Assembly: GCA_965637545.1 (NCBI GenBank)
Contig: OZ281494.1
Coordinates: forward strand, 26,536,001 to 26,600,000
Direction of reading: 5' to 3'
Length of the DNA stretch: 64,000 bases
DNA from: Phallusia mammillata
Lineage: Eukaryota
The notes under the pieces were generated by a model that ran no database searches, was not told where the DNA came from, and was given only the letters and a program-made list of their open reading frames with translations. Every line of letters starts with the position of its first letter. The stretch's first letter is position 1. The position numbers and the translations under genes were made by a program. Positions 29,512-62,416 of this stretch are shown in pieces.

Positions 29512-31718
29512 ATGTTTTGTCAGCTGCTAACACTGCTGTTTATAAGTCAAAGTGCATCTCAGGACTCTTCATCGACCGGTTGCAAAGGAAGCACAATTAT
29601 TCAGTATTTCGGAAGTGACCATTCATTGATTCAAGACCAGTTGCACCCAGTTGGTCCATCACGTCATGTAGCACCTGGGGCACCAGGAAAAAGAGGACCT
29701 GTTGGCGAAATGGGCCCAACCGGCCCTAAGGTAAATTAAATCATAAAATGCACGTCAAAATTTGTGATATTTTTAGTAGGGATGTTCAGCGTTATAACAA
29801 CATAAGTTATATTCTGTTTATCCTAATTCCTGTTTTAGGTTTGTGTAAAACAGCAAAGAATTGTTAACTTTGTTCATTTAATCACCGATAATGGTGGAGA
29901 GTGTTACCAATAAAATTTGAAAGCAGACTTAACCAAACCTGTAAAACCTAATTGTGTACTGGCAGGTGTATAAAGTAGTATCACGTTTAAAATAAAATAC
30001 AAAACTTGTTTGCGCTAATAAAAGTTTTAGCTACATTATATTAGCCTTAAATTTTGTGAAAGCTCTTATTTACGCTTGGGTTTGAGCATCACTTAAATGC
30101 TTTTCGGACTTTGTTCATTCAGACTTCACTAAAGATTGTTAGGCATTTTATCAAAAAATAATAATTTAATTTGTTTGATTGGCAGGGTGATAGGGGAACC
30201 AAAGGTCAAAAGGGAGAACCTGCCCTTTCTTCGACAATCCTGGAATTGAAAAGAGCAGTTCACGAATTAGAAAACTCAGGTATGGTTAAGATTTGCAACC
30301 GTTTTGGTAATCTAAATTTACCAGGTGTAATGGTCCTAAGCGAATCAAAACGAATATCAGTTGCGATCAGTCCCCATCTCAGGCACTAATCCAACTTGAA
30401 ACAAACATTGATTTGAATGTATAATAAAGACGGAATGCACAAAAGTTTAATTAATGTAATACTATGATCCCTGCAGAAGATTTTTTTAAAGTATAATGTA
30501 CCTCACATTTTTTCAGTCATGAGAATGACATCGATTGGGCACGACAGCGAGTCTGAAATTGAGGCAGGTAACTGCGATCCAGCAAGATGTTACAAAAGAG
30601 CGGTAACATACACCACTAGCATGGAAAACATTGTTCGTCTTATTAGTTCATCTCAACACTGCAGACAATTTATCAAGGTATTTGGGAAAATCCTTTATTA
30701 TCTACCACTATGTAAATCCGCAGGAAATGTTTGGGTCATATTTGGTTTAGTATTTTTGGCTGTAGGTTAGTACATGCGTTTCACGCTGCGGTTGAAGGAA
30801 TACATTTTCGTGGCACGTAACTAAACAATGAATTAGTCTGGCAGGTTAAACCATCTTCCAGTAAGTAAAACTTGTAAGAAAATTGCAAAAAGACCATTTT
30901 TTATTTTTTCGAAAGCAAAGACGCCACATTTTTTCACTAACATAGGCTATTTTAATGTCGGGACATTTCCAATAAACCGTGTGTTTTAAAGATTGGAGGG
31001 TAAATAAAGATTTTGTACAAATGTGTGCAAAACAAACACAAACGTTGTATTATATACAATAGCCACAACCCTTAAAACCAATTAGCGCCTTGTAAAAAGG
31101 GCAGAATATGTAAATAACACCTAAAACTTGAGTTTGGCCACATTGTGATTTCACAAACATTTTTTTTATAGTACCGGTGCCGAGGTTCCTTTCTATTTAG
31201 GAATGGAAATATTTTTGCAGCTTGGGTGTCTAGAAACGGAACCCTGAAATACAACTGGGGTGGAAGCGAAAGAAACTACTATTGTGCGTGTGGGGAAACT
31301 GGTGAGTCCGAGTCAATTATTTCAGCCTGCAGAAAATCACTTTCGTTATATATTGTGCTCTTCCCGTGTTTTTGACATTCTTCACATCCGTCTTTTGCTT
31401 GCACTAAAGCATGCTGACGACCTTGCAGTAAAAAACCACACGTCGAAATAATTTTTAACCCACTTAAAGATTCCAATTTTGGTCTAGCGCCTAGTTTGTG
31501 TGATTGTAGTGTTTGAATTTGCATTTTTCTTTGTTGCAGGAACATGCATTGACAATAGTCACAAATGTAACTGCGACCAAAACTCAGGTAGTATAACTAC
31601 ATCGGATGAAGGATATCTGACAAACAAAGCTGATCTACCAGTAACTGGAATGCATTTTGGAGACCTTGACGGTGGCGAGTATGGTTGGCACACTCTGGGG
31701 AAACTTGAATGCTGGTAA
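29512..31718 (+). CDS. Paralogue G: intact 5-exon form (260 aa)
   Basis: Exons 29512-29730, 30186-30279, 30517-30677, 31172-31301, 31540-31718 (783 nt, open frame). Confidence 0.9.
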
Positions 31719-37452: not shown

Positions 37453-37540
37453 AAAGTTTTCAGAGTTTGCTGAAAATAAAGTTTTCAGAGTTTGCTGAAA
37501 ATAAAGTTTTCAGAGTTTTCTGAAAATAAAGATTCCAGAG
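37453..37540 (+). repeat. 3.5 x 25-bp tandem hairpin repeat at the PBS position
   Basis: AAAGTTTTCAGAGTTTGCTGAAAAT x3 starting 3 nt after the 5' LTR end. Each unit contains TTTTCAG..CTGAAAA. Confidence 0.9.
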
Positions 37541-37566
37541 TTATCTATAAAGTGAATTTCGCCACG

Positions 37567-43336: not shown

Positions 43337-45290
43337 GTGCATCCGACGCATTCAGGCCACGCAGTCGTCGAACTGGCCCAGAATTGCGGTGCACAAGATC
43401 CTGGTGCTGATGAACGAAGAAATATCATGGACGCTATGCTGTTTGCTGCATTACACATGCCGCACTCTGAAATTCGCCAGGTTGGAGCTTTGCTCACCAA
43501 CGGCGTTTCGCGACGCGACTGTTTAGCTTTCGTGTGTGTTTGCGTTGTTTCGTGATTCGATGTTTTCTTGGTTTGTTTGTAAATGTGTTTGAAGTGTAAG
43601 CACACATTTAGAGGGGAGAATGTAACATCGTAAATCACTCAACCGTAACCTACGTCACATCTTGTATGGTGTGATTGCACCACAATGCCAGAATCCCTTA
43701 TGACGTAACAATATCATTGTAGATTATTTCTCCATGCTGTGCTTTTGGCCATTTAGTATTGAGTTTAGTTTGACCCACGTGTAGTTCGTTAGTTGCTGAC
43801 TTGAATTTGCAGCCGTTAGATAAAGTAATGAAAGTGACTAAATATAATTTGTTTGTCATTAATGGATGGTAGTGCTTTATAAACTTAAAAACTCTGACGA
43901 AAAGGAATAATGTTGCCTTTGCAAGGTAAGCTTGATTTGCATTTTAGTTGCCCGACTTGCCGTACATTTCAATTATCGTTTTTTATGTGTGTAGAATGCT
44001 TTCTGACGATTTCAAGATATTTGTATCTTTGATAGGCTACCCTGGTCCAAAACTCTGGTAAGCTTTATTTCTGCCGGCATAAAATTAATTTCTGTTTCCC
44101 ATTTTTGAGTGAATGTTCTCTTTGCAGAAAACCGTGATCGTGATCGTGTCGTGTCTACCGTGAACGTGACGTGATTACCGTGTCGTGTTGAACCGTGTTG
44201 ACGTGTAAAATAAATTCACGCGTTTCCAGAAATTGGACTTCTCTAGTGTGACGCCAGCGCTGTACCAGGCGCGCAAATTCCTGACGTTACACACAGGTCT
44301 GCCAGGTGGTAAACATACTAAAAGTGTGCAAGTTAACTGCATGCCACGTGCTGCGTTACGGTCAGGTTATTAAGGTTTTTTGTATCTAATGACATCGTTC
44401 AGTTAAAAAAAATTCAATGTCAAGCGAAAACAAATCAATTTAACTTTTTTCGTGTTTATTGTGGGGGTGAAAACTTTGACAAGTTAGAAGTCATCCACCG
44501 TTTTATTTAGACATATATATTTAACCCAAGTAATAGGCATCTTATTGTTGGGGTTTCATGTTTATATGCTTTGTTATGACATGATTACGGACCACGCTTT
44601 ACCTTTAAATCCATTATTGCTGCGCATGTACATTAAAAGTGCAAAGAAAAAAAGTACACAATATTTTGTTTGACAACCCCCGATTTAAGTGACAGCGATG
44701 TTCTCTGGTACCATTGCCAACACTGCGCTGACGACAGTAATAAGAAATCCACTTGATAAAACAAAAACATATTGTCTGAAACGCATCTGGAAACCATATC
44801 ATGTGTAATGTCGAGAATTTGCGCGCCACAACATGTGATGTGACGTAGGTAATAGGTCGAGTGAGTTACGGCGGCGAAACAAGTTTAAAGCAAACTCCAG
44901 CTATCAGATACCTGCGTATTAGCAAAATACGCACTAACATGGTAACGTGTGCAAAGAGTGTTTTTTTATAATGCAATGGTGTATGCCTCGCGTTTTGTAA
45001 TAAACTTTATCTCCAAATAACTAGTTATTGCGCAAACTCGATGCATGTATGTACAATTAAGTGTCACGAATAATTTCTGTACGTGACAAAAATGGACAGA
45101 AATACATTTGCTTGGTTTTCCAATTGCACTGCAGTGCATTTTGTCATTGCAACATGCTAGTTGTTTCATACGAGTCATTTTTTTGAATCGCAAAAGTGGT
45201 GACAAGAGTTCCAGAAACAATTTTTGCAGCTGTTTTAAGAAACGATCATTACCCTGCCGGAAACACACCTAAAATAGTATGTCTTTAAGC

Positions 45291-46542
45291 ATGATTTGTC
45301 TGATGCTTACACTGCTGCTTATAAGTCAAAGTGTATCTCAAGACTTGTCATCAACTGGTTGCAAGGGAAGTACAATTATTCAGTATTTCGGGAGTGATCA
45401 GCAATTGACTCAACATCAGTTGCATCCAGTTAGTCCATCAGGTCGCGGAGCACCTGGAGCACCCGGAAAAAGAGGACCCGCTGGCCAAGTGGGACTAATT
45501 GGTCCAAAGATAAATACTTTTTAGGGAGAAAGCTGTACAGTGTTTGTTATTGTTTTTACGGAACCTTTGCAACGGCAGCGTTGTCTTTTAGTTAAAAACA
45601 CGAATCTTGTAAGTTTAAGTAACGGTAGCCTATATTTAAGATAATATTGTAACGCAAGTGGCATTTTGCTTTTATTGTGACTTGGACACGAGTCCATATT
45701 TTTAATTAGAGTTTAGAAACACATTTTGCGAAGTACAATTATTTCTAATCAGAATATTTAGCCTTGTTCGTTTTCTTGATTTAGATGTACCTTTATGGTG
45801 ATTTTGTGGGATTAAAAACGACAGGGTTTGTTCATAGTACGTTTTAGCACATACTTAACCACCGTCACTGTATGAAAAGGATAAAAATCATGTTTAGAGA
45901 ATGCCAACCTTTCACTTCATGACGGTGACAAAGGTTAATTGTAGCTCGTGTGTAAAGGCGTGATTAGAACTGAATACGGACCTTAAATTGGAAACCTGGT
46001 CCGACTAAGCACTTTAATTGCTAACAACGCCACAAATTTGTACGTAGCGTGTCAAACTACACACTGCAAAATGTTATTGGAAGCATGCGTGTCTTGTAGA
46101 TACTCTAATGGCTGACGTTTCCACTTCCAAAACATTTCAAGCTTTGAAAAAAGTATTTTTGTATGTGGTTTTGATTTGAAACCATTGATTAATTATGAGA
46201 TACATTCACAAACGTATACAAAATTTTGCCACCGACAATAAAGTTTTTATCATATTTTTGAATAGGGTGAACTAGGCAGCAAGGGCCAAAAAGGAGAACC
46301 TGCGTCTGTTTCTACAATCAGGGAATTAAAAAAGACAATTTCCCGTTTGGAACGCTCTGGTATTTAGGATTGCTAGCATTTTGCTGTTTTGTGTATCAGT
46401 TACAGGCCCACAAAGTTTAATTTTTTGTCTTGTTTAGTAAATGCTGTGTCCACCAATTGCAATGAAGCTGCATTGTCGTCAGGATATTATCTTATTTCAC
46501 CTCTGGGGCTTCAGGGAATCCACTTCTACGTTTACTGCAAGG
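45291..46542 (+). pseudogene. Paralogue H: 3'-truncated pseudogene (exons 1-3 only)
   Basis: Exons 45291-45509 (donor GT mutated to AT: ccaaag|ataaat, stop four codons later), 46266-46359, 46438-46542. Homology to I ends near 46682 (gtaagctaacttcc). Confidence 0.85.
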
Positions 46543-47728
46543 GTAAAAACATCAAAAAAAGTTAAAAAAATATTAAATACCTTCAAATAAACCGGAAATA
46601 AACCCAGCTAAATATTTAAAAATTTGCGTGAACTATTGTGTCACTGGTTGATACCACTTTAATGCAGGTAAGCTAACTTCCTAACTGAGCTACAAAAGCT
46701 TATTGGTGAACCCGCCGAAAGTCGAATGACATGAGCTTTTAACGAATGGCGTAAACGGCAATTAAGTTTTAATCAAGTAATTGATAAACATTTTTTTTCT
46801 GAAGTTTTTAAAAATCTACTTTCCATTCATGTTTTATCTGCTGTCGGTTTAACAAAATCATAGATTTATGAGCCAGCTGTGATTTCCAGCCGCCTTTCTC
46901 TTTTTAACACAAATTCACTGTTGTGCACTTAAACCAGGGGTGGGCAAACTTTTCAGTGCAAGGGCCGCATTCAAAAGTTCTTAATCTTATCGGGCCGCAT
47001 AGTATTTCACCAACGGCCGCCAATTGCTTGCTTGTTTTTGTTTTAAAATAACTGGTGCAAAGAATTTGATTTGCATCATATATTTATACCATTTAAAGCC
47101 ACCTAAAATGCTCAGATTAATAATTTCTAACTTGGTGCATAAGTTTAGCTAAACGATGCTCACTGTTTATGATGTCATAATGTGTATTGTGACGATTGCG
47201 GTGCCTGTTTTTTCGCATTGTTTGCGCACAATAAGCGGATGAAAAGCCTGACGCATATAGTTACTAGGCACAAACTTGTCTCCGAGGCCGCAGGTTGTGC
47301 ACGCCTGATCTAGCTCAAAATATTGACATAGCATATTTTCAGCTATGTGCAAATAAGTTTGTTGTCACTTGATTGGACAAACATGGGTTGAAATTGAAAC
47401 GCTACATTTGTAATTGTTTCAAACTAAACTAGCATTTAAACAACCACGTTTTTGGTTAATAAATTCCTTGCGCCAACATTAAACAAGGCGAGCCGCTTTT
47501 AGCATCCATCTTTAGGTCTTGTGCGGGTCTGTGTTAACGATTCTGAAGCCGTTTTTTTTGTCCGTTTGCAACTGCAACGACCTAAACTTGATCCAAAGTG
47601 ACCAAAGTTTTGGCGTCAAAAGTGCAAATTCGGCTGTATTTGAAAACGTGAATCGCTTTTACTTTTATCGAACGAAGAAAAAAAGACCCTGACAAAAAAG
47701 GGTACTGATTTTATTTAAAGGATAAATC

Positions 47729-47914
47729 AGGGGTTCTTAAACAGGGCTGCACGCACCCCCAAGGGATGCGAGAACTGTTCCTAGGGAGTGCGGGGGTGCT
47801 ACATCATCAAAGTTGGTTAGGTCTATTCTATATAAATACAAAAACCCAGGGGGTGCGAAAATTGGTTGGTTATTTGAAATGAGTGCAGCAAGGAAAAAAG
47901 GTTAAGAACCACTG
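47729..47914. mobile_element. hAT MITE upstream of J (second copy ~57097-57283)
   Basis: Ends CAGGGGTTCTTAA / TTAAGAACCACTG. TSD gtataaac is perfect in the second copy and diverged (ggataaat) on the left of this one. Confidence 0.75.
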
Positions 47915-48323
47915 GTATAAACTATAGTCCGGAATTTCCCAGACATATCTGGAATTTCTGTGAAAAATCTATGCCCGACAATAAAGTTATAATTAACCAA
48001 GTTTGAAAATTAAACAATTCATACCATTTTAAAGCACCTACATTTTGAAAACAAATCAAGCACTCGTGATCACAAGGTTCACTAAGAGGTTATTTTGTAA
48101 CCTTTTTCACACGGTAACAGCAGCCTTGTGTTTCTTGCTAAAACACAGGTATCAGGTCGACACAAATGCTTGTGACATGTTAGTCGGCGGATGTATATCA
48201 GACAAGGTACGTTATGTTTAAATCGAAAATCGAATGAAATAAATTTCTTCTCAGTGTCATTAGCGCAGCATAGAGAGTGGTAACAGTGTACCCTCCCATT
48301 TACTTCGAAAATTGTCCAACAAA

Positions 48324-51300
48324 ATGTCGTGGACTTTTTTCTTGGCTTTTTTGATCTGTATGAGAACCAGTCATGGATTCGAAGGTAAAACGGATATATT
48401 TTTTAAAACTATATAAATATTTGTGCTTTTGCAAAAAGATTTTGGCATAATTCGATGACTAAATTTTGTAAGCATTGGTGACGCAACATTTACTTTTATT
48501 TTTTATTATTTTACTCACTGTTGACTTAGTGGGCGCCTTATTAAGTCGTGTGTGCAATTTAAAGCAGGACTGGTGATTGATAACAATTTCTCGAAATATA
48601 TATATTTTTTTGGTTGCAGTGACGTGCGAAACCGAGTTTTCTGAATTGAAACATTCCATCACAAAACTTCTGTGCCCTGATAACTGCTGGAGGCAACATT
48701 CAACTTTGTGTGGTGACCGTGTTTACTCCAGGGGTCCGGTGTGTCTAGCTGCTATGCAGGACCAATGGATTGACGGTAGGTGACATCGTTCGTTTAGCTT
48801 TTACCCTGCCTTTTAAGTATTCTACCATGGCTGTCCTAAAAAGGAAATACGGATACCTCTTTTATCCATACAACTAAATTATTGTGTAAACTAATAGCTT
48901 GTTGTTTTTGAGTTTCTCCTCATGTTGATATGTGGTTTTGAGCGGGTCCAACTTTTAGACTTAAAACTGGCCTGATTCCAAAAATATAAGCCCGAAACCT
49001 ACCAAACTCAAACATTTAACAAATTCTAACTATTCCCATACTCCCGTGATTCCCGCTTAAACCAAACTAAGTATTATGACAAAACATGCATTGTTGAGAT
49101 GTAAAAAGCAACAAATCTGCCATTTTTTGCATAGTTTGTAATCAGGCATAGTTTGAAATTAGAAATTTTTGCTAAGTTGAAAATCATGCATCTAAACGTT
49201 GTTTTCAAAAAACTCCTAGGCCCATACCCGAAACGGTGGTTGTCGGTGGCGCGGGTTACAACTCGGACACAAAGACACACAAACAAATAGCATAACTAAG
49301 TGGACGTTCTTGTCCTTTTATTCCTCACTTTGTAGGTGGTGGTGGACCAGTGGTTGTTTTTCGAAATCCAAATAGCAATCGCAATCATTACAGTGGAGGA
49401 AATCGAAATGCAGTGACGAGTAATTCATGTTCTGCCTCTGGAAGCTCCTACTCCTTTGAAAGTAAGTGATAAAATCCAAACATCCGTAACGTTAAATTTG
49501 GCTAACAAGTTTTGAAATTGCCTTTGACAAAAATGTTGCGTTCTTCAAACACAGAACCCTAATACGAATCCCGATCAGTGTTTTAGCGTTGTAATATGGG
49601 TTACTGAGATTGGCCCACAATGCGGGAGAAAAGGTGACGGAACCAATATTATCATAAAATTATTGAACACATCGGTATGTGGTGTTTCTATTTATAATAA
49701 TGTCGGCAGTCAATGGTCCAGAGGTGTAGGCATAAGCCACACCCTTCTTGCGTAGATCATGTGAACAATTTCTGTCATATAACAACGATTTTCGACTTTT
49801 TGTCGAGTAATTAAGTAATAACTTAACACACACAAAATCTTAGGGAAAAAAGGTGCTTGGTTTTAACGCAAACATAACTTGTTTAGTGACATGCTCGACT
49901 CGGGGTGACTCGGCATCATCAGTCACTAGTGTATGGTGTCCAGCTGCTTGCGGAAATGAACCGGTCTACGGGTCGGTAATGTACAGTGTCAAGTCATCGG
50001 TATGTAGAGCTGCAATACATGCTGGAAAAATTTCAGGTAAGAGAATCAAGCTATCGCAAAACCATCTGCTGCGGTTTTGGATGTCGAAAAACTTTAGGGC
50101 TTTGGTATCAACGCTTGATTCGCCCAACGCACGAAGCAAAAATTTTCTTCGTAATAGTAGGCTGCTTTAGAATTTGTTGCAAAGCATGTTTTCTGTAAAA
50201 CAACACTGCGCATAACGCTTGTGCTTAACACTGTCATGTGTAAAACTCCTACCAAAAACGTTGTAACGTCAACAATTAGACCTGATCTTGATTTACGTAA
50301 ACCTAAAAAAGAGTCTCAAAGCCAAATTAAACCCTTCTCAAACCCGGCTTCAGTTTGAATAAAACAGTTGATTTGTTTTTGACTTTACGCCAGGCAACAT
50401 TTGTGTTTTTGGTCAAACTAACTTTCGGGTTATAAAGTGGCATTTCCTCCTAATCTTTTGTCATGCACTGCCGAGTGCTTCCGCTGAAAATAATTATGGC
50501 AAAAACAGTGGTTTGTTTTCGCATTAATTTGGTTAATCATAAGACCTACTTTATTATCAGTATTTGGGGGTGTTTGACCTTCTTAAATTGACCTAACAAC
50601 ATGTGTGTCATTTTTGTTCCTTTCAGAAGGAGGAGGATTCGTCAGATTCTTTGCAGCTAAAAGTCAACATGTTTTTATCGGTTCGTTATCAAATGGAATT
50701 GTAAGCAATTCTTCTGAAGAGATTGGTTCTGCGTTTAGCTTTACAAGTAAGATATGAATACTAACACAGCCGTGTTAAATGGGAACAAGCCCCTAGCAAA
50801 CTTTTTAGCATATTTTCTCAATTTTATAGAAGAGTCGTGTTTGATGGCGTCTGGAGACAAAAGACCAGGCCTGTAATTAGTAAACTCTGTTCCAAAGTGA
50901 AAGTTAAATCGGCAAAACATTAACACTCTGTTTGAAAATTAATTTTTAAAGCCCAACCAAACAATACCATTCTCATTTGACACATCAAGCGGGTTTAAAC
51001 GCTGGTCGCTTTTTGTACAAAACCCGATTCTATTCTGTTTGTACGTGGTTTAAGAGCAGTGGTTCTCAAACCTTTTTATTGTCGGGGCCAAATGATATTT
51101 TTTAAGTGTGTAGGGAGCCGCAAAAAAAACACGAAACCTTGAGAAAATCACTAAAGAAGATGACTTTGAAAGCTAAAATAGCAATGTTTGGTGGATTTCT
51201 GAGGTCTGGTGCGAGCCGCAAAATAAGTAGTTGGGAGCCGCATGCGGCCCCGAAAACCGAGTTTGAGAACCACTGTTTAAGAGCAAGTTCCAACCATTTT

Positions 51301-53053
51301 AAAAGATGCCTAAAATCTAACGTTGTATGCCGTTGCTCGTTTACCAGCCGTAACATTGCATTGTTTGAATTTTGCAGATAAAGACGAATGTGAAGGTAAT
51401 CCATGCATGCATGGCGGCACTTGTGTGAACGGACTAGAGGAGCATTTTTGCCTGTGCAGGCCACTTTATACAGGAAAAAAATGCGAAATAGGTGTGTTAA
51501 ACAAATCGTGTTGGTAAAACTGGCGTACGATTGTAAAATTGCAAAACATTTGGTGCCTTTTTAGGTTAAAACTATGTGATAAATAATTCTAAACCGTACG
51601 CATTCATTTAGGTGGCAATATATTCAAATTAAACTAAAATTAACTTAATCACTAGCTTAAACCCAAGTCGAAATAACCTTTTCGCTAACTTATCATAAAA
51701 GTTATGGTTCTAAGCGAATCAAAACGAATATCAGTTGCGATCATCTCCCATCTCAGGCCCTAATGATTTGAATCCATAATAAGACGGAATGAACAAAAAG
51801 TTTAATTATTGTAATACTATGATCCCTGCCAAAAAAATTTTTTTTTGTGTAACATATTTTTAAGCAGTTAGAATGACGTCGATTGGGCACGACAGCGAAT
51901 ATGAAATTGAGGCAGGTAACTGCGAACCAGCAAGATGTTACAAAAGAATCGTAACATACAACACCAGCATGGAAAACATTGTTCGTCTTATTAGTTCATC
52001 TCAACACTGCAGACAATTCATGAAGGTATTAAGTAAAATAATTTATATGCCCTCTCACAATATATATGCCTGCATGCGTTTCATGCTACGGTTGGAATGA
52101 CATCTTGAGGTGACATATAGCTAAACATATCAATTATTCTTTCAGGTTAAACCTTAAAACGCCTACCAGCAAGCAAAACTTGCAAGGAAATGGCAGAAAA
52201 AAACACTGCTATCTTTTTACTAATATTGTCATTTTGATACTGAGACAATTTCAAATAATTAAAAACCTACAATTAAGTTTTGATTCTGGCATGATTGGAA
52301 GATTAATGGCACCCTAATATTACGTAATTGGATACCCAGCACTTTTCAAAAGTTTCAAGGGTGAAAAAAGGTTTGTTTTATTTTGTTCAAAATGTGTGCA
52401 AAACCAATTTAACGATGTCTTATAAGCAAAAAGTCACAAGCTATGTATAAAACGGGCAAAAGGTGTAAAAAACGCCCCAAAAACTTTCACGAACATTTTT
52501 GTTTATAGTACCGGTGCCGAGGTTCCGTTCTATTCTGGAATGGAGATTTTTATGCTGCTTGGGTGTCTAGAAACGGAACCCTGAAATACAACTGGGGTGG
52601 AAGTGAAAGAAACTACTATTGTGCGTGTGGAGAAACTGGTGAGTCCGAGTCAACTATTTAGGCCTGCAGAAAATCACTTTCGTTATATATTGTGCTTTTC
52701 CCGCGTTTTTTCATTCTTCACATCCGTCTTTTGCTTGCACTAAAGCATGCTGACTACCTTGCAGTGATAAACACACGTCGAATCAATTTTTAACCCACTT
52801 AAACATTCCAATTTCGTTCTAGTGCCTAGTTTTTGTTTTTGTACTGATTAAATTTATATTTTTCTTTAATGTAGGAACATGCATCGACAATAGTTACAAA
52901 TGTAACTGCGACCAGAATTCAAAGTATATAACTACATCGGATGAAGGATACCTGACAAACAAAGATGATCTACCAGTAACTGAAATGCATTTTGGAGACC
53001 TTAGCACTGGCGAGTATGGTTGGCACTCTCTGGGAAAACTTGAATGCTGGTGA
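48324..53053 (+). CDS. Gene J1: chimeric secreted protein signal-LCCL-LCCL-EGF-Caspr-type FReD (397 aa)
   Basis: Exons 48324-48384 (MSWTFFLAFLICMRTSHG), 48620-48775 + 49336-49461 (LCCL1: TC..CPDNC..GDRVY..VCLAA / GGPVVV..YSGGNRNAV), 49887-50036 + 50627-50746 (LCCL2: CPAAC..VYGSVMYSVKSSVCRAAIHAGKI / GGFV..FIGSLSNGIVS), 51378-51491 (EGF DECEGNPCMHGGTCVN..CLCRPLYTGKKCE), 51868-52025, 52509-52638, 52875-53053. 1194 nt, open frame, all GT-AG. Confidence 0.88.
51057..51275. mobile_element. hAT MITE in intron of J1 (second copy ~60421-60639)
   Basis: CAGTGGTTCTCAAAC / GTTTGAGAACCACTG, perfect TSD tttaagag. Confidence 0.88.
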
Positions 53054-53816
53054 AGGCATTATACTCACAGTAATGTTTGATTTTGTTGCATGAGTTTGTT
53101 GTCATTTTATAAACACACGTTTTTAGTTGGCTCATATCATAGTGTTGCTGTAAATTAAAGACGGGACTCTGTTCCCCTTTTCCATTGAAAATACGCTATT
53201 TTACAACCGACGCACACGCCTATTAATTAAAAAGATTCAAAGTGCCCAAAATGTGGCCTGTAGTTAATCGATTTGCAAAAAAGGCGATAAAACAATTATC
53301 TGTTTGTTGTATCTGTATTTCAAGCTTTCGCATTCAACGTTTATCTTTCTTTCAACGTTTACAGTATAAGACGGTCACACATTTGAAGCCATTTGTTTTA
53401 TAATAAGACACAATACTACTCTACACTGGCAAAATTAAAGCTCTTTTTTGTACTGTGATTTTGTTGGTCTTGATAAACTTGTATTTTTTTGCTTTTTATT
53501 GTAACAAATCATTGCTGTATGCCTCTCGTCATGCAAGTAGCATTTGCTTCAAATAATTAGTTCTGACGCAAAATTGATAGATTTATACACACAGTAAAGG
53601 CACGAAATCGTTCTGTGCGTGACAATGCTACAAATATCCTTGCCTGGTTTCCAATCGTTTTTGCCATTTGAACAAGTTAGGTATTTCAGACTACTTTGCC
53701 GAGTCGCAAACGTAGTGACAAAAGTTTGAGAAGCATTTATTGCAACTGTTTAAACAAAGATATACCTTACTGTATACACAACAACAACAATGTATTTCAA
53801 AGTTGTTTCGAAAAAC

Positions 53817-56021
53817 ATGATTTGTCTGCCGCTTACACTACTGTTGATAAGTGAAAGAAAATCTCAAGACTCGTCATCCACTGGTTGCAAGGGAAGTACA
53901 ATTATTCAGTATTTTGGGAGTGATTAGCATTTGACTCAACATCAGTTGCATCCAGTTGGTCCGTCAGGTCGTGGAGCACCTGGGTCACCCGGAAAAAGAG
54001 GACCTGTTGGCCAAGTGGGACCAATCGGTCCAAAGGTGCATACTTTTTAGGAAGAAAATCTGTACGGTGTGTTTGTTATTGTTTTTACGGAACCTTTGCA
54101 AGTGCAGCGTTGTCCTTTAGTTAAAAAATGAATCATGTGAGTTTAAGTAACGATATTTAGGATAATATAGTAACGCAAGTTGCATTTTGCCCATACCGTG
54201 ACTTGACACTAGTCCAAGTTTTTAATAAGAGTTTAAAGACACATTTTGATAGGCTCTGATTAGCTAACAATTTGTACGTGTAGTATGCTAAACTACACAC
54301 TTAAAGTGATAATAGTAGCATGCTTTGTAGATACTCTAATGGCTGACGTTTCCACTTCCAAAACGTTGTTTTTCAAGCTTTGAAAAAAGTATTTAAAACT
54401 GCGGCTTTGATTTGAAACCATTGATGCTGGGATACATTCAAGAATGTATGCAAAATGTTGCTACCCGCAATAAAGTTTTCATCTTATGTTTCAATAGGGC
54501 GAACCAGGCAGCAAAGGCCAAAAGGGAGAACCTGCGTCTGTTTCTACAATCAGGGAATTAAGAAACACAATTTCCCGCTTGGAACGCTCTGGTATTTTAT
54601 GATTGCTGGCATTTTTCTGTTTTGTGTATATCAGTTTTTCCACAAAGTTTAATTTTTTGCTTGTTTAGTAAATGCTGCGCCCACCAATTGCAATGAAGCT
54701 GCAGTGTCGTCAGGATATTATCTTATTTCACCTCTGGGGCTTCAGGGAATCCCCTTCTACGTTTACTGCAAAGGTAAAAAATTTAGTTGTTAAATACCTT
54801 CAAATGAACCGGAAATAAACCAAGCTACTTAATTGCGTATATTATTACGTTACTGATTTGTATCACTTTAATGCAAGTAAGCTAACTTCCTTCGTTTCAA
54901 TAATCGTCACACTTAATTTACTTAGCTGGTTCTAGCGTTTCATCTGTGAAACGAGCATCGATTGGCCACGACAGTGAATCTGAAATTGCGACACAAAAAT
55001 GCGAACCACATAGATGTTACAGAAGGACAGTAACATACGACATAAGCATGGAAAATATTGTTCGCCTCTCAACACTGCAGACAATATATTAAGGTAACTG
55101 GTAAATAAGTAAATTCAGTAAGGCCGGCCCTTATATGGATGGCATAACACCAAATCAAGCTGATCTCCCAAGCATTTTCATATAGCAAGTGCGGTGGCAC
55201 TCTAACCCACGACAAGAGCCTTTTCGGGGATCGCGTTTTACCAACTGAGCCACGCAGGCTCATTGGCGAGCCCACCGAAAGTCCAATCACATGCGCGTTA
55301 AACGAATGACGTAAACAGCAATCAGGTATTAATCAAGTAATGTTTAACAAATCGTAGGTTTTTTGAGCCGGCTTTGATTTCCTGGCGTCTTTCTTCTTAA
55401 TCGCCACAAACACACTGTTATCCATCGTTAAACCATCCAATGGCTTAACATTTTGCATGTTAATCCGATTACTACGTTGATGGTTCATAATATCTACGTT
55501 AAGTTTTCAAAAATTGAAACCAGTTAATCTGTTTAGTATCGGTGTAAAGGATCTCATCTATGCAATACCAAACATGTTTACGCAGCCTGGGTGTCAAGAA
55601 ACGGAATACTGAAATACAACTGGGGTGGAAGTGAGAGAGACAGCTATTGCGCGTGTGGGGAAACCGGTAAGTCTATGGTCTATTTCTTTCATTGAATTTA
55701 AATGTATTTTTTGTCGAGTTGACACACAGTATATATGTCACCCACAATTCCTCTGCACCTTAACAAAATAAACACGTTTTTAATTTCGGATTTGTTTTTA
55801 CTAATTGCTTTGAACAAAATCATTCTTTATTTGATCAAGGAACGTGCATCGACAATAACTACAAATGTAACTGTGATAAAAATTCAAATGATATAACTAC
55901 TTCGGATGAAGGATACCTGACAAACAAAGATGATCTACCAGTAACTGAAATGCATTTCGGAGACACTGGGGGCAGTGGCGAGCGTGGTTGGCACACTCTG
56001 GGAAAACTTGAATGCTGGTGA
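53817..56021 (+). pseudogene. Paralogue I: 6-exon form, pseudogene
   Basis: Exons 53817-54035 (TAG at 53925, codon 37, CAG in paralogues), 54498-54591, 54669-54773, 54926-55093 (11-nt deletion frameshift near 55068), 55537-55666, 55840-56021. Confidence 0.88.
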
Positions 56022-56196
56022 AAAGAATGCTTAGATAGATATAATCGAACTATAATGCCCGCATGTAGATGTACTGACTCGTATATTCTATCCTTTTAAC
56101 TGCTATTTCAAATCATATTATACGTCCCACGAATTATCTCCCATTTTCGTATTGCATTGAAAATCGGCACACAAATCCTAAACAAAAATCACAAGG

Positions 56197-56291
56197 ATCG
56201 GTTATATATATATCGGTTATATATCGGTTATATATCGGTTATATATCGGTTATATATCGGTTATATATATCGGTTATATATCGGTTATATA
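56197..56291. repeat. Minisatellite (ATCGGTTATAT)n with variable TA number
   Basis: About 8 copies of an 11-13 bp unit. Confidence 0.9.
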
Positions 56292-57689
56292 GGGTATGGA
56301 TATTGTACAATATCATATTGCTGACATTTGTTTTGGCCAAAGTACCATAGAAAATCTATGACAATGACACAGTTAAGCATGTCCAACAATCATTAAATTA
56401 TTGTTGCTGCATAAGTTTTGCAATCGCGCTGACCTTTGCAAAATGTATTGCTCATCTTGCTTAAGAGGCTGCATGGAATTAAACGTGACGCGAAAAATCT
56501 TGGTCTAAGGTCATATTTTAGTGTAAAGAATTTGAGTGGCGTTGCGATTGCGTCGGAGAAGAAATAAATTTAATGCCATGAAGCTGCATTTTCTTGTTTT
56601 ATTTTCATATGGACTGTTATCATTTAGTGTTAAAATGCAAAGAAAGCTCGTTTTACTTTATTTGGAAAACATAAAAGTACAATGACAAGCGAACACTATG
56701 AAAATGTATAACCCCGAAGTTCTACCCGAATCCGAATCTTTTTTTTAGCATTCCGTTTGGGCCCGAAGGTTTTATTGACAGGTCTACATTAAAACTAAAC
56801 AATAGTGGGCAATGGCTTTACCTGGACGTTTAATGGCTGTTTGGCATTACGTTAAGTCCAGCTACTATCCGCTAAGCTAGGTAATTTGTATTTTTTGTTA
56901 AATTATGGAAACAGAATGGGAAGTCAGGGCCGAATCAAGTCCGTTTGTTAAAAAAAATCTAAGTCTGAACCAGATCCGGAAAGCCTGGCCCGACCTGACT
57001 TAAACACACGTAATCCTGTTAGTAGACAATACTATTGCCCACAAGACACAAAAGAACCTGACAAAAAAGGGTACTGATTTTATATAAAGTATAAACCAGG
57101 GGTTCTTAAACAGGGCTGCACGCACCCCCAAGGGATGCGAGAACTGTTCCTAGGGGGTGCGGGGGTGCTACATCATCAAAGTTGGTTAGGTCTATTCTAT
57201 ATAAATACAAAAACCCAGGGGGTGCGAAAATTGGTTGGTGATTTGAAATGAGTGCAGCAAGGAAAAAAGGTTAAGAACCACTGGTATAAACTATAGTCCG
57301 GAATTTCCCAGACATATCTGGAATTTCTGTGAAAAATCTATGCCCGACAATAAAGTTATAATTAACCAAGTTTGAAAATTAAACAATTCATACCATTTTA
57401 AAGCACCTACATTTTGAAAACAAATCAAGCACTCGTGATCACAAGGTTCACTAAGAGGTTATTTTGTAACCTTTTTCACACGGTAACATCCTTGTGTTTC
57501 TTGCTAAAACACAGGTATCAGGCCGACACAAATGCTTGTGACATGTTAGTCGGCGGATGTATATCAGACAAGGTACGTTATGTTTAAATCGAAAATCGAA
57601 TGAAATAAATTTCATCTCAGTGTCATTAGCGCAGCATAGAGAGTGGTAACAGTGTACCCTCCCATTTACTTCGAAAATTGTCCAACAAA

Positions 57690-60600
57690 ATGTCGTGGAC
57701 TTTTTTCTTGGCTTTTTTGATCTGTATGAGAACCAGTCATGGATTCGAAGGTAAAATGGATATTTTTTTTAAAACTATATAAATATTTGTGCTTTTGCAA
57801 AAAGATTTTGGCATAATTCGATGACTAAATTTTGTAAGCATTGGTGACGCAACATTTACTTTTATTTTTTATTATTTTACTCACTGTTGACTTAGTGGGC
57901 GCCTTATTAAGTCGTGTGTGCAATTTAAAGCAGGACTGGTGATTGATAACAATTTATCGAAATATATATGTTTTTTGGTTGCAGTGACGTGCGAAACCGA
58001 GTTTTCTGAATTGAAACATTCCACGACAAAACTTCTGTGCCCTGCTAACTGCTGGAGGCAACATTCAACTTTGTGTGGTGACCGTGTTTACTCCAGGGGT
58101 CCGGTGTGTCTAGCTGCTATGCAGGATCAATGGATTGACGGTAGGTGACATCGTTCGTTTAGCTTTTACCCTGCCTTTTAAGTATTCTACCATGGCTGTC
58201 CTATAAAGGAAATACGGATACCTCTTTTATCCATACAACTAAATTATTGTGTAAACTAATAGCTTGTTGTTTTTGAGTTTCTCCTCATGTTGATATGTGG
58301 TTTTGAGAGGGCCAACTTTTAGACTCAAAACTGGCCTGATTCCAAAAATATAAGCCCGAAACCTACCAAACTCAAACATTTAACAAATTCTAACTATTCC
58401 CATACTCCCGTGATTCCCGCTTAAACCAAACTAAGTATTATGACAAAACATGCATTGTTGAGATGTAAAAAGCAACAAATCTGCCATTTTTTGCATAGTT
58501 TGTAATCAGGCATAGTTTGAAATTAGAAATTTTTGCTTAGTTGAAAATCATGCATCTAAACGTTGTTTTCAAAAAACTCCTAGGCCCAGACCCGAAACGG
58601 TGGTTGTCGGTGGCGCGGGTTACAACTCGGACACAAAGACACACAAACAAATAGCATAACTAAGTGGACGTTCTTGTCCTTTTATTCCTCACTTTGTAGG
58701 TGGTGGTGGACCAGTGGTTGTTTTTCGAAATCCAAATAGCAATCGCAATCATTACAGTGGAGGAAATCGAAATGCAGTGACGAGTAATTCATGTTCTGCC
58801 TCTGGAAGCTCCTACTCCTTTGAAAGTAAGTGATGAAATCCAAACATCCGTAACGTTAAATTTGGCTAACAAGTTTTGAAATTGCCTTTGACAAAAATGT
58901 TGCGTTCTTCAAACACAGAACCCTAATACGAATCCCGATCAGTGTTTTAGCGTTGTAATATGGGTTACTGAGATTGGCCCACAATGCGCGAGAAAAGGTG
59001 ACGGAACCAATATTATCATAAAATTATTGAACACATCGGTATGTGGTGTTTCTATTTATAATAATGTCGACAGTCAATGGTCCAGAGGTGTAGGCATAAG
59101 CCACACCCTTCTTGCGTAGATCATGTGAACAATTTCTGTCATATAACAACGATTTTCGACTTTTTGTCGAGTAATTAAGTAATAACTTAACACACACAAA
59201 ATCTTAGGGAAAAAAGGTGCTTGGTTTTAACGCAAACATAACTTGTTTAGTGACATGCTCGACTCGGGGTGACTCGGCATCATCAGTCACTAGTGTATGG
59301 TGTCCAGCTGCTTGCGGAAATGAACCGGTCTACGGGTCGGTAATGTACAGTGTCAAGTCATCGGTATGTAGAGCTGCAATACATGCTGGAAAAATTTCAG
59401 GTAAGAGAATCAAGCTATCGCAAAACCATCTGCTGCGGTTTTGGATGTCGAAAAACTTTAGGGCTTTGGTATCAACGCTTGATTCGCCCAACGCACGAAG
59501 CAAAAATTTTCTTCGTAATAGTAGGCTGCTTTAGAATTTGTTGCAAAGCATGTTTTCTGTAAAACAACACTGCGCATAACGCTTGTGCTTAACACTGTCA
59601 TGTGTAAAACTCCTACCAAAAACGTTGTAACGTCAACAATTAGACCTGATCTTGATTTACGTAAACCTAAAAAAGAGTCTCAAAGCCAAATTAAACCCTT
59701 CTCAAACCCGGCTTCAGTTTGAATAAAACAGTTGATTTGTTTTTGACTTTACGCCAGGCAACATTTGTGTTTTTGGTCAAACTAACTTTCGGGTTATAAA
59801 GTGGCATTTCCTCCTAATCTTTTGTCATGCACTGCCGAGTGCTTCCGCTGAAAATAATTATGGCAAAAACAGTGGTTTGTTTTCGCATTAATTTGGTTAA
59901 TCATAAGACCTACTTTATTATCAGTATTTGGGGGTGTTTGACCTTCTTAAATTGACCTAACAACATGTGTGTCATTTTTGTTCCTTTCAGAAGGAGGAGG
60001 ATTCGTCAGATTCTTTGCAGCTAAAAGTCAACATGTTTTTATCGGTTCGTTATCAAATGGAATTGTAAGCAATTCTTCTGAAGAGATTGGTTCTGCGTTT
60101 AGCTTTACAAGTAAGATATGAATACTAACACAGCCGTGTTAAATGGGAACAAGCCCCTAGCAAACTTTTTAGCATATTTTCTCAATTTTATAGAAGAGTC
60201 GTGTTTGATGGCGTCTGGAGACAAAAGACCAGGCCTGTAATTAGTAAACTCTGTTCCAAAGTGAAAGTTAAATCGGCAAAACATTAACACTCTGTTTGAA
60301 AATTAATTTTTAAAGCCCAACCAAACAATACCATTCTCATTTGACACATCAAGCGGGTTTAAACGCTGGTCGCTTTTTGTACAAAACCCGATTCTATTCT
60401 GTTTGTACGTGGTTTAAGAGCAGTGGTTCTCAAACCTTTTTATTGTCGGGGCCAAATGATATTTTTTAAGTGTGTAGGGAGCCGCAAAAAAAACACGAAA
60501 CCTTGAGAAATTCACTAAAGAAGATGACTTTGAAAGCTAAAATAGCAATGTTTGGTGGATTTCTGAGGTCTGGTGCGAGCCGCAAAATAAGTAGTTGGGA

Positions 60601-62416
60601 GCCGCATGCGGCCCCGAAAACCGAGTTTGAGAACCACTGTTTAAGAGCAAGTTCCAACCATTTTAAAAGATGCCTAAAATCTAACGTTGTATGCCATTTC
60701 TCGTTTACCAGCCGTAACATTGCATTGTTTGAGTTTTGCAGATAAAGACGAATGTGAAGGTAATCCATGCATGCATGGCGGCACTTGTGTGAACGGACTA
60801 GAGGAGCATTTTTGCCTGTGCAGGCCACTTTATACAGGAAAAAAATGCGAGATGGGTGTGTTAAACAAATCGTGTTGGTAAAACTGGCGTACGATTGTAA
60901 AATTGCAAAACATTTGGTGCCTTTTTAGGTTAAAACTATGTGATAAATAATTCTAAACCGTACGCATTCATTTAGGTGGCAATATATTCAAATTAAACTA
61001 AAATTAACTTAATCACTAGCTTAAACCCAAGTCGAAATAACCTTTTCGCTAACTTATCATAAAAGTTATGGTTCTAAGCGAATCAAAACGAATATCAGTT
61101 GCGATCATCTCCCATCTCAGGCCCTAATGATTTGAATCCATAATAAGACGGAATGAACAAAAAGTTTAATTATTGTAATACTATGATCCCTGCCCAAAAA
61201 AATTTTTTTGTGTAACATATTTTTAAGCAGTTAGAATGACGTCGATTGGGCACGACAGCGAATATGAAATTGAGGCAGGTAACTGCGAACCAGCAAGATG
61301 TTACAAAAGAATCGTAACATACAACACCAGCATGGAAAACATTGTTCGTCTTATTAGTTCATCTCAACACTGCAGACAATTCATGAAGGTATTAAGTAAA
61401 ATAATTTATATGCCCTCTCACAATATATATGCCTGCATGCGTTTCATGCTACGGTTGGAATGACATCTTGAGGTGACATATAGCTAAACATATCAATTAT
61501 TCTTTCAGGTTAAACCTTAAAACGCCTACCAGCAAGTAAAACTTGCAAGGAAATGGCAGAAAAAAACACTGCTATCTTTTTACTAATATTGTCATTTTGA
61601 TACTGAGACAATTTCAAATAATTAAAAACCTACAATTAAGTTTTGATTCTGGCATGATTGGAAGATTAATGGCACCCTAATATTACGTAATTGGATACCC
61701 AGCACTTTTCAAAAGTTTCAAGGGTGAAAAAAGGTTTGTTTTATTTTGTTCAAAATGTGTGCAAAACCAATTTAACGATGTCTTATAAGCAAAAAGTCAC
61801 AAGCTATGTATAAAACGGGCAAAAGGTGTAAAAAACGCCCCAAAAACTTTCACGAACATTTTTGTTTATAGTACCGGTGCCGAGGTTCCGTTCTATTCTG
61901 GAATGGAGATTTTTATGCTGCTTGGGTGTCTAGAAACGGAACCCTGAAATACAACTGGGGTGGAAGTGAAAGAAACTACTATTGTGCGTGTGGAGAAACT
62001 GGTGAGTCCGAGTCAACTATTTAGGCCTGCAGAAAATCACTTTCGTTATATATTGTGCTTTTCCCGCGTTTTTTCATTCTTCACATCCGTCTTTTGCTTG
62101 CACTAAAGCATGCTGACTACCTTGCAGTGATAAACACACGTCGAATCAATTTTTAACCCACTTAAACATTCCAATTTCGTTCTAGTGCCTAGTTTTTGTT
62201 TTTGTACTGATTAAATTTATATTTTTCTTTAATGTAGGAACATGCATCGACAATAGTTACAAATGTAACTGCGACCAGAATTCAAAGTATATAACTACAT
62301 CGGATGAAGGATACCTGACAAACAAAGATGATCTACCAGTAACTAAAATGCATTTTGGAGACCTTAGCACTGGCGAGTATGGTTGGCACTCTCTGGGAAA
62401 ACTTGAATGCTGGTGA
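57690..62416 (+). CDS. Gene J2: second copy of the LCCL-LCCL-EGF-FReD chimera (397 aa)
   Basis: Exons 57690-57750, 57985-58140, 58700-58825, 59251-59400, 59991-60110, 60742-60855, 61231-61388, 61872-62001, 62238-62416. Differences from J1 seen by eye: I>T, D>A, I>M, E>K and one silent change. Confidence 0.88.

What the first reader, a model, noticed from the sequence alone, without database searches (positions are those of the whole stretch)
48324..53053. Exon shuffling caught in the act: LCCL-LCCL-EGF module grafted onto the cluster's fibrinogen-like head in place of the collagen stalk
Seen: an open 9-exon, 397-aa model. Its last three exons are nearly the same as gene G's, and the intron before them (51705-51867, ..ctaagcgaatcaaaacgaatatcagttgcgatca..) matches intron 2 of G (30330-30516). 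This places the junction inside that intron. The upstream exons are a new signal peptide, two LCCL domains and one EGF exon, and every junction among them is phase 1, matching the phase-1 intron they joined. Known: LCCL (Limulus factor C/cochlin/Lgl1) domains occur in secreted proteins implicated in innate defence, and phase-1 symmetric exons are the classic shuffling substrate. Inference: a trimer-stalk opsonin-like gene gave rise to a new multidomain secreted protein. I do not recognise the architecture LCCLx2-EGF-Caspr-type FReD, and it has already been duplicated.
Basis: partly seen in the sequence, partly recalled or inferred. Interest (0 to 1): 0.9.

Follow-up and report, generated by a model that had tools for sequence, protein, structure and literature searches.

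The report
Young chimeric LCCL-EGF-procollagen-head gene
In a sea-squirt array of genes for small collagen-stalked proteins, one transcribed member had its stalk exons replaced, by a break inside an intron, with exons for two LCCL domains and an EGF domain; this is a clean, young case of exon shuffling, not a new principle.

Summary
48324-53053 is an open nine-exon GT-AG gene: signal peptide, two LCCL domains, one EGF, and the array's three-exon Cys-rich head. Exons 2-6 are phase 1-1. The 3' part of intron 6 matches intron 2 of gene G (E 4e-36); its 5' part and everything back to 46937 match nothing else in the window. Intron-free contigs from four probably-RNA runs join the EGF exon to the head exon.

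Corrections:
- The head is not a canonical fibrinogen domain. It is the C-terminal petal of a fibrillar-procollagen C-propeptide (COLFI) fold (Z 11.4 to 5K31).
- The head is 91% identical to G in DNA, not nearly the same.
- The head nests inside the local array on a tree, so the fusion is lineage-specific, unless gene conversion reset it.

No LCCL was found in 187 head relatives, including Styela, Ciona and Clavelina proteins. The donor was not found. This scan noted LCCL-LCCL-EGF-fibrinogen gene clusters on other pieces of this genome; they are the obvious donor candidates but were not tested here. The spliced protein could not be sent whole to any database tool. Interest is moderate.

The parts
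46937..51700 (+). Foreign block. It carries the 5' flank, exons 1-6 and the 5' part of intron 6 of H1.
   Evidence: No similarity to any other array gene in the window; it matches only its own recent duplicate from 47675 on. Left edge: homology of the dead gene O to gene I stops at 46936. Right edge: homology to G intron 2 starts at 51701.
48324..48384 (+). H1 exon 1: start codon and signal peptide
   Evidence: Hydrophobic core followed by a small-residue cleavage motif, read from the translation. No RNA contig covers it.
48620..49461 (+). H1 exons 2 (48620-48775) and 3 (49336-49461): LCCL domain 1, both exons phase 1-1
   Evidence: Pfam LCCL 6.4e-5 on exon 2. Colinear alignment of the joined exons with an uninterrupted LCCL-LCCL protein. 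No RNA contig covers them.
49887..50746 (+). H1 exons 4 (49887-50036) and 5 (50627-50746): LCCL domain 2, both exons phase 1-1
   Evidence: Pfam LCCL 9.7e-11 on exon 4. Exon 4-5 joint seen in three runs. Colinear alignment.
51378..51491 (+). H1 exon 6: EGF domain with six cysteines, phase 1-1
   Evidence: Pfam EGF 8e-9. Joints to exon 5 and to exon 7 seen in contigs.
51701..51864 (+). 3' part of intron 6, homologous to G intron 2 (30327-30516). The recombination junction lies just upstream.
   Evidence: 78.7% identity over 164 columns, E 4e-36.
51865..53053 (+). H1 head: exons 7 (51865 or 51868 to 52025), 8 (52509-52638) and 9 (52875-53053). COLFI-type petal domain of about 155 aa.
   Evidence: 91.4% nt identity to G's head. 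Keeps 30 of 30 positions conserved in at least 90% of the family. Joints 7-8 and 8-9 seen in contigs. Fold inferred from a 57%-identical Ciona relative.
57690..62416 (+). H2: second copy of the chimeric gene, open, with 7 exonic differences from H1
   Evidence: All diagnostic letters in the RNA-like contigs are those of H2.
47675..57042 (+). Tandem duplication unit (H plus dead gene I), period 9368 nt. The second unit starts at 57043 and runs off the window.
   Evidence: 99.25% identity over 6968 nt.
45291..46936 (+). O: dead remnant of a stalk-type gene just upstream of the foreign block
   Evidence: Exon 1 frame is open but its donor reads AT instead of GT. Exon 2 is present, head exon 1 is deleted, and homology to I ends inside I's intron 3.
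53817..56021 (+). I: stalk-type pseudogene between H1 and H2
   Evidence: In-frame stop in exon 1. An 11-nt deletion shifts the frame in head exon 1.
29512..31718 (+). G: closest intact stalk-type paralogue. 260 aa: signal peptide, 10 Gly-X-Y triplets, short coiled-coil neck, head.
   Evidence: Five-exon open model; intron 2 is phase 1.
51057..51275 (.). MITE-like insert in intron 5 of H1 with perfect 15-nt terminal inverted repeats
   Evidence: High contig depth with loose ends shows it is transcribed from other loci.

Best explanation
H is a real, transcribed, lineage-specific chimeric gene of an ascidian. The window holds a tandem array of about ten genes for small secreted proteins built as signal peptide, about 10 Gly-X-Y triplets, a short coiled-coil neck, and a 155-aa Cys-rich head. 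The head has the fold of the petal of the fibrillar-procollagen C-propeptide.

In one G-like member, a DNA-level rearrangement replaced everything from the neighbouring gene O's intron 3 to about 47 nt into the member's own intron 2. The replacement is a 4.8-kb foreign block (46937-51700) with its own 5' flank, a signal-peptide exon, four exons for two LCCL domains and one EGF exon. It was not retroposition, because the block has introns. All block exons are phase 1-1 and the recipient intron is phase 1, so splicing EGF to head exon 1 keeps the frame.

The product is a secreted SP-LCCL-LCCL-EGF-head protein of 398 aa. It has no collagen and no neck, so it has probably lost the array's means of trimerising. 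Later the unit (H plus dead gene I) duplicated in tandem (0.75% divergence).

Inferred function: an extracellular binding protein in which the LCCL domains supply ligand binding and the retained head supplies whatever contact the array's heads make.

Shown: gene structure, domains, breakpoints, splicing of exons 4-9, and nesting of the head within the array. Inferred: direction of transfer, one-step origin, secretion, function.
For: - Open nine-exon model with the stated phases; LCCL, LCCL and EGF by Pfam and by colinear alignment.
- Spliced contigs join exons 4 through 9, including EGF to head. The acceptor used sits at the position homologous to G's.
- Intron-level homology to G begins at 51701 and runs through introns 7 and 8. 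The block 46937-51700 is unrelated to the rest of the array.
- H sits in array position and orientation, between dead stalk genes O and I.
- On a tree, the seven window heads form one clade (99/87), sister to a Ciona protein. H1 and H2 nest with B, E and G (100/93).
- H's head keeps 30 of 30 family-conserved positions. dN/dS between H and G is 0.41.
- No LCCL in 150 head relatives from 1.84 billion representatives, nor in 43 more from word searches seeded with Styela and Ciona heads, nor in a 29-kb Styela locus.
Against: - Exons 1-3 have no transcript support. One contig ends one base upstream of exon 4 with a G, where exon 3 would supply an A.
- All transcript letters fit H2, none H1.
- On the H branch the head shows 14 non-synonymous to 4 synonymous changes, against 6 to 9 on the G branch (Fisher p about 0.03-0.04). 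This fits relaxed constraint as well as adaptation.
- Gene conversion from G would produce the same intron-bounded homology and the same nesting.
- The donor was not identified, and the full-length protein was never searched as one sequence.
- The four runs are labelled RNA only as a guess.
Confidence: 0.7

Rival explanations
1. The fusion is old and gene conversion makes it look young. An LCCL-LCCL-EGF-head gene has sat in the array for a long time. A conversion tract from G, running from mid-intron 6 to the 3' end, recently overwrote its head. The homology boundary at 51701 would then be the edge of the tract, not the shuffling junction.
For: Tandem arrays convert often (general knowledge). 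Identity to G is uneven along the head region: intron 8 is 89%, the shared part of intron 6 is 79%, and intron 7 aligns only in patches at 74-77%. The orphan O is itself a mosaic, G-like in exon 1 (84.7%) and I-like in exon 2 (82.5%).
Against: No LCCL-bearing relative of the head was found in Styela, Clavelina or Ciona proteins. The left edge of the foreign block coincides with the truncation of neighbour O, as one replacement event would give.
Confidence: 0.15
2. H is a young chimeric transcript with no function, drifting towards a pseudogene like its neighbours O, I and F.
For: The non-synonymous to synonymous ratio on the H branch is near the neutral expectation (14:4). H1 and H2 differ as much in exons as in introns. 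At least three array members are dead. Contig depth is low, about 4-6.
Against: Both copies keep a 398-codon open frame, all 16 splice sites, all cysteines and 30 of 30 conserved head positions. dN/dS against G is 0.41, below 1.
Confidence: 0.1
3. The 'already duplicated' state is an assembly artefact: H1 and H2 are two haplotypes of one locus laid in tandem.
For: 0.75% divergence lies within ascidian heterozygosity (general knowledge). Transcripts show only H2 letters. The two DNA runs hold only 0.85 of H1's sampled words.
Against: The window has no gaps. The repeat unit has a defined left edge at 47675/57043 inside unique sequence, and a full dead gene lies between the copies. Such tandem units are ordinary in this array.
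Confidence: 0.15
4. The direction is reversed: a head cassette copied from G was inserted behind an LCCL-EGF gene that already resided here.
For: Homology data alone cannot give direction.
Against: H lies in array register and orientation. Its 3' flank continues into array-type spacer (53510-53655 resembles the region upstream of G and of O). A truncated array gene abuts the block on the left.
Confidence: 0.05

Closest known systems
Fibrillar procollagen C-propeptide (Pfam COLFI PF01410; PDB 5K31, 4AE2, 6FZW)
   Same: The head of the closest public relative (Ciona P0015 residues 137-290, 57% identical to H's head) folds with pLDDT 96.5. It matches only these structures: Foldseek E 5e-6 with the top 17 hits all procollagen, and VIA-align Z 11.4, rmsd 3.1, 139 residues aligned, with the next hit at Z 7.4. 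29 of 91 relatives match COLFI. In the array genes it follows a collagen segment and a coiled coil, as in procollagens.
   Different: Only chain residues 77-246 are matched, so the N-terminal stalk and base that make the procollagen trimer are absent. H's own exons give no Pfam hit singly. In H there is no collagen at all.
Ascidian short collagens that NCBI names 'contactin-associated protein-like' (Styela clava XP_039248885, Ciona intestinalis XP_078491785, Clavelina lepadiformis XP_076809182)
   Same: Same head at 50-59% identity. Most carry a short collagen segment before it. The window's stalk genes G, B, C, D and E belong here, and H's head nests among them.
   Different: None of 187 collected members carries LCCL. 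They are not Caspr proteins; the name reflects similarity of one domain only.
LCCL-LCCL-EGF-fibrinogen gene clusters noted by this scan on other pieces of the same genome (s1-375383, s1-411728, s1-355936, s1-385390)
   Same: Same stated N-terminal order: signal peptide, two LCCL domains, one EGF.
   Different: Their C-terminal domain is described as fibrinogen-type with ligand-pocket loops, whereas H's is a COLFI-type petal.
Cochlin, CRISPLD1/2 (Lgl1) and Limulus factor C (LCCL proteins)
   Same: LCCL domains in secreted proteins; CRISPLD proteins have two LCCL domains in tandem (general knowledge).
   Different: Their partner domains are vWA, CAP or protease modules, not EGF plus a COLFI-type head.
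Coral EGF plus COLFI protein (Montipora capricornis XP_068722449)
   Same: EGF directly before a head of this family; aligns with H residues 187-397 at 33% identity.
   Different: No LCCL. It has the full-length COLFI-like domain (profile positions 29-220). Its head branches far from H's on the tree, so the EGF-head adjacency arose independently.

Membership tests
LCCL domain (PF03815) | Profile match above Pfam's gathering score | tested here: met
   Exon 2: 23.5 bits against a 22.6 cut-off. Exon 4: 42.1 bits. Only the first half of each domain was scored, because each domain is split by an intron.
LCCL domain (PF03815) | Complete domain, both halves in order | tested here: met
   Joined residues 20-204 align colinearly with two uninterrupted tandem LCCL domains on L002 and L004 (E 6e-15 and 4e-10). 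Exons 3 and 5 alone gave no Pfam or PDB hit.
EGF domain (PF00008) | Profile match above the gathering score, and six cysteines | tested here: met
   36.1 bits against a 21.5 cut-off. Six cysteines are read in the exon 6 translation.
COLFI, fibrillar collagen C-terminal domain (PF01410) | Profile match | tested here: inconclusive
   H's head exons give no hit singly, and the joined head could not be submitted. Relatives match: 29 of 91, best E 1.2e-18. P0129 matches profile positions 29-220.
COLFI, fibrillar collagen C-terminal domain (PF01410) | Fold of the C-propeptide | tested here: met
   Tested by proxy on Ciona P0015:137-290. 5K31_A gives Z 11.4 with 139 residues aligned; the top 17 Foldseek hits are all procollagen C-propeptides.
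COLFI, fibrillar collagen C-terminal domain (PF01410) | N-terminal stalk and base that form the trimer | tested here: not met
   The alignment covers chain residues 77-246 only. The window's heads begin after the GxYxIxP...FxVxC segment of the family consensus.
Canonical fibrinogen-related domain (PF00147) | Profile match or fold match to fibrinogen, ficolin or angiopoietin C-domains | tested here: not met
   No hit for H's exons. 6 of 91 relatives match; the one inspected matches only profile positions 2-52, a part that H lacks. No fibrinogen-type chain appears among Foldseek hits with E up to 0.05 or in the top 50 by VIA-align.
Caspr / contactin-associated proteins | Discoidin, laminin-G, EGF and fibrinogen-like domains plus a transmembrane segment | tested here: not met
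   H is 398 aa with LCCL, LCCL, EGF and head only. The name comes from automatic annotation of relatives.
Collectin/ficolin-like collagen-stalked proteins (the array's type) | Gly-X-Y stalk before the head | tested here: not met
   A Gly-X-Y run lies before the head of every stalk gene but not within H; the nearest one belongs to dead gene O.
Gene made by exon shuffling | Symmetric exons in the phase of the recipient intron | tested here: met
   Exons 2-6 are phase 1-1. G's intron 2 is phase 1.
Gene made by exon shuffling | Breakpoint inside an intron, with homology to the recipient family on one side only | tested here: met
   Homology to G starts at 51701 and there is none upstream.
Gene made by exon shuffling | Chimeric joint present in mature transcripts | tested here: met
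   Contigs in X2 and X3 join exon 6 to exon 7, and one runs on into exon 8. The runs are RNA by inference from intron-free coverage.
Gene made by exon shuffling | Donor gene identified | not testable with these tools
   The rest of this genome cannot be searched from the session. Searches with LCCL exons found no close relative. Earlier notes give candidates.

The most novel reading that the evidence does not exclude
In this ascidian the SP-LCCL-LCCL-EGF cassette is a reusable phase-1 module. It has been joined to two unrelated kinds of C-terminal head within one genome: canonical fibrinogen domains in clusters elsewhere, and a procollagen-type petal here. H's procollagen-type head may still dock onto its stalk-type paralogues, adding LCCL arms to their assemblies or capping them.
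Probability: 0.3. Interest if true: 0.65.

Novelty: new variant of a known kind. Interest (0 to 1): 0.45.

Why it matters
Both breakpoints of the rearrangement can still be read in the DNA. One is inside a phase-1 intron of the recipient gene; the other truncates the upstream neighbour. The recipient family is still next door, transcripts use the new joint, and a fresh duplicate exists. That makes this a compact, teachable case of how secreted multidomain proteins arise in a close relative of vertebrates.

It also corrects the label of a whole ascidian family that databases call 'contactin-associated protein-like': these are short collagens ending in a procollagen-C-propeptide-type petal.

If the cassette proves to be shared with the LCCL-EGF-fibrinogen clusters elsewhere in this genome, it would show one N-terminal module paired with alternative heads. 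That bears on how invertebrate chordates diversify recognition proteins.

It is not a new mechanism. No function is known for H or for the array.

Tried and rejected
- The spliced 397/398-aa protein has no reference, so it was never sent whole to Pfam, to the protein databases or to structure prediction. Exons were searched apart and the joined sequence was used only in local scripts.
- Exon 9 alone and a seven-paralogue profile of it against PDB sequences: nothing relevant. A 47-member head profile against PDB sequences: no hit at E up to 1.
- ESM Atlas with exon 9: no usable hit. With exon 4: generic LCCL clusters only.
- Word-index protein search with LCCL exon 4: no candidate, as expected from the length filter.
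- Metagenome scan with exon 4: three loci. Two are LCCL-LCCL proteins that read through TAA/TAG, probably ciliate. One is a lone LCCL exon at about 40% identity. None is a donor.
- Styela clava locus of the closest-scoring head gene, 29 kb: no LCCL exon.
- Terminal repeats or transposon ends at the edges of the foreign block: none found. The only clear element is a MITE inside intron 5.
- The idea that orphan O's stalk exons are the original 5' half of H: rejected. O is I-like through its intron 3 and has its own decayed head region, while H's head and intron are G-like.
- Literature searches for LCCL with ascidian or fibrinogen terms found no paper on such a protein.
- Look-ups of earlier findings by sequence were blank.


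Full report
**What is there**

The window is AT-rich animal DNA with no gaps. Introns 1-6 are phase 1, and exons 2-6 are each a multiple of three in length.

- Scanned exon by exon, exon 2 and exon 4 match Pfam LCCL (6.4e-5 and 9.7e-11, both above the gathering score). Exon 6 matches EGF (8e-9).
- Exons 3 and 5 give nothing alone. The joined residues 20-204, however, align colinearly with two uninterrupted tandem LCCL domains on metagenome contigs L002 and L004 (E 6e-15 and 4e-10). Exons 2+3 and 4+5 are therefore two whole LCCL domains.
- Exon 1 reads as a signal peptide.

**The array**

The last three exons recur ten times in the window. Each copy other than H1 and H2 is preceded by a short Gly-X-Y exon. 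Gene G is a five-exon, 260-aa model: signal peptide, ten Gly-X-Y triplets, a short coiled-coil neck, then the head. Its intron 2, before the head, is phase 1.

**Transcripts**

Four small runs of the same species hold about a tenth of the stretch's sampled words. Their contigs cover exons and skip introns, so I take them for RNA although the tool only guesses that. They show GT..AG joints for exons 4-5, 5-6, 7-8 and 8-9, and a joint between exon 6 and exon 7.

That last joint was reported with four extra letters. This is explained by the second copy, whose exon 6 ends differently, and by use of the upstream AG of an AAG|CAG acceptor. Exon 7 then begins at 51865 (61228 in copy 2) and is 161 nt, exactly the length of G's exon 3. 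The protein is 398 aa.

- One contig runs from the EGF exon through head exon 1 into head exon 2.
- No contig covers exons 1-3. One contig stops one base before exon 4 with a G where exon 3 would give an A. The 5' end is therefore unverified.
- Every diagnostic letter in the contigs is that of copy 2.

**Breakpoints**

- The 3' part of intron 6 (51701-51844) matches G's intron 2 (30327-30487) at 78.7%, E 4e-36. Introns 7 and 8 also match G, intron 8 at 89%.
- The 5' part of intron 6, introns 1-5 and the 1.4 kb upstream of the start codon match nothing else in the window except the recent duplicate.
- To the left lies O, a dead stalk gene. Its exon 1 is open but the donor is mutated. Exon 2 is present and head exon 1 is deleted. 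Its homology to gene I stops at 46936, inside what is I's intron 3.
- The foreign block is thus 46937-51700. One replacement event that removed the end of O, the spacer, and the first two exons of a G-like gene would account for both edges.
- No transposon ends mark the edges.

**Order along the window**

G, a BEL/Pao retrotransposon (37167-44291), O, H1, I, H2, I2. I carries an in-frame stop and a frameshift. The unit H plus I is repeated with a 9368-nt period at 99.25% identity. H2 is open and differs from H1 at seven exonic sites.

**What the head is**

- A phmmer search with exon 9 against 1.84 billion representatives gave 378 hits. The best identity was 71%.
- Named relatives are ascidian proteins (Styela clava, Ciona intestinalis, Clavelina lepadiformis). 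NCBI calls them contactin-associated protein-like or similar. This shows that the genome is an ascidian's and that this species' own proteins are not in the library.
- Of 91 relatives scanned, 29 match COLFI, 8 Collagen and 6 Fibrinogen_C. The head also occurs with SRCR, PAN, discoidin, Ig, C-type lectin, EGF, CUB and C1q domains.
- A model of the Ciona relative's head (57% identical to H's) has pLDDT 96.5. It matches only procollagen C-propeptides: the top 17 Foldseek hits are all procollagen (best E 5e-6), and VIA-align gives Z 11.4 to 5K31 over chain residues 77-246, with the next hit at Z 7.4. No canonical fibrinogen-type chain appears.
- The one Fibrinogen_C hit inspected among relatives lies in an N-terminal segment that the window's heads lack.
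- The head is therefore the petal part of a COLFI-type domain. The array genes are miniature collagens with a procollagen-like C-terminal domain rather than ficolin-like proteins.

**Age and fate**

- H's head is closest to G: 91.4% nt identity, dS 0.165, dN/dS 0.41.
- On a maximum-likelihood tree with 47 public heads, the seven intact window heads form one clade (99/87), sister to a Ciona protein. H1 and H2 nest with B, E and G (100/93).
- The fusion therefore post-dates part of a lineage-specific expansion, unless gene conversion reset the head.
- H keeps all 30 positions conserved in at least 90% of the family.
- Polarised with outgroups, the H branch has 14 non-synonymous to 4 synonymous changes against 6 to 9 on the G branch (p about 0.03-0.04). 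This means relaxed or altered constraint after loss of the stalk.

**Is the architecture known?**

No LCCL was detected in any of these sets:

- the 150 listed relatives (BLAST, a local LCCL profile, Pfam on 91);
- the 43 further proteins from word searches seeded with the Styela and Ciona heads, whose precomputed Pfam lists show no PF03815;
- a 29-kb Styela locus.

Literature searches found nothing.

However, this scan's earlier notes report LCCL-LCCL-EGF-fibrinogen genes, some in tandem clusters, on other pieces of this same genome. I could not reach those sequences. They are the obvious donor candidates for the cassette. They also mean that the N-terminal half of the architecture is probably not new here.

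**Limits**

- The joined protein could not be submitted to any database tool because it has no reference.
- The genome outside the window cannot be searched.

**Verdict**

This is a real, spliced, young chimeric gene made by intron-located DNA rearrangement. Its core interpretation is supported, its domain label is corrected, and 'in the act' is softened. Interest is moderate: a well-resolved example of a known process giving a domain combination not seen in the relatives examined.

Noticed in passing
window 37167-44291: BEL/Pao-type LTR retrotransposon between G and O. ORFs match Pao peptidase A17, integrase and DUF5641. The flanking repeats 37167-37450 and 44000-44291 are 97% identical. This explains the GC-rich stretch at 38-44 kb. 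Described only.
   Followed up: partly
window 27825-28011 (gene F, head exon 3): A 4-nt insertion shifts the frame of F's last exon, so F looks dead or misassembled at that point.
   Followed up: partly
window 53817-56021 (I) and 63179 onward (I2): The stalk gene between the two H copies has an in-frame stop in exon 1 and an 11-nt deletion in head exon 1. Its recent duplicate I2 carries the same exon-1 stop.
   Followed up: yes
window 51863-51870 and 61226-61233: Tandem AAG|CAG acceptor before head exon 1. Transcripts use the upstream AG, the position homologous to G's acceptor. Use of the downstream AG, which would drop one Ala, was not seen but is not excluded.
   Followed up: yes
window 51057-51275: MITE-like element in intron 5 with perfect 15-nt inverted ends. 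Contigs cover it at about 35-50x with loose ends running into other sequence, so copies elsewhere are transcribed. A related end occurs at 47894-47921.
   Followed up: partly
window 49886: One RNA-like contig ends exactly one base upstream of exon 4 with the genomic G, not the A expected from exon 3. It may be an unspliced molecule, another upstream exon or chance.
   Followed up: no
window 44595-44748 and 48243-48392: A 150-nt stretch upstream of O resembles, in reverse orientation (69%, E 1e-10), the stretch holding H's 5' UTR, exon 1 and the start of intron 1. It may be a shared repeat.
   Followed up: no
L002 and L004 (metagenome contigs): Two contigs encode tandem LCCL-LCCL proteins that read open only if TAA/TAG are sense codons, suggesting ciliate origin. 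They show that the LCCL pair is an old arrangement outside animals.
   Followed up: partly
window 579-56021 (whole array): Public relatives of the array's head are named contactin-associated protein-like, neurexin-4-like, or EGF and laminin G domain-containing. By profile and fold they are short collagens with a procollagen C-propeptide-type domain, so the names mislead.
   Followed up: yes
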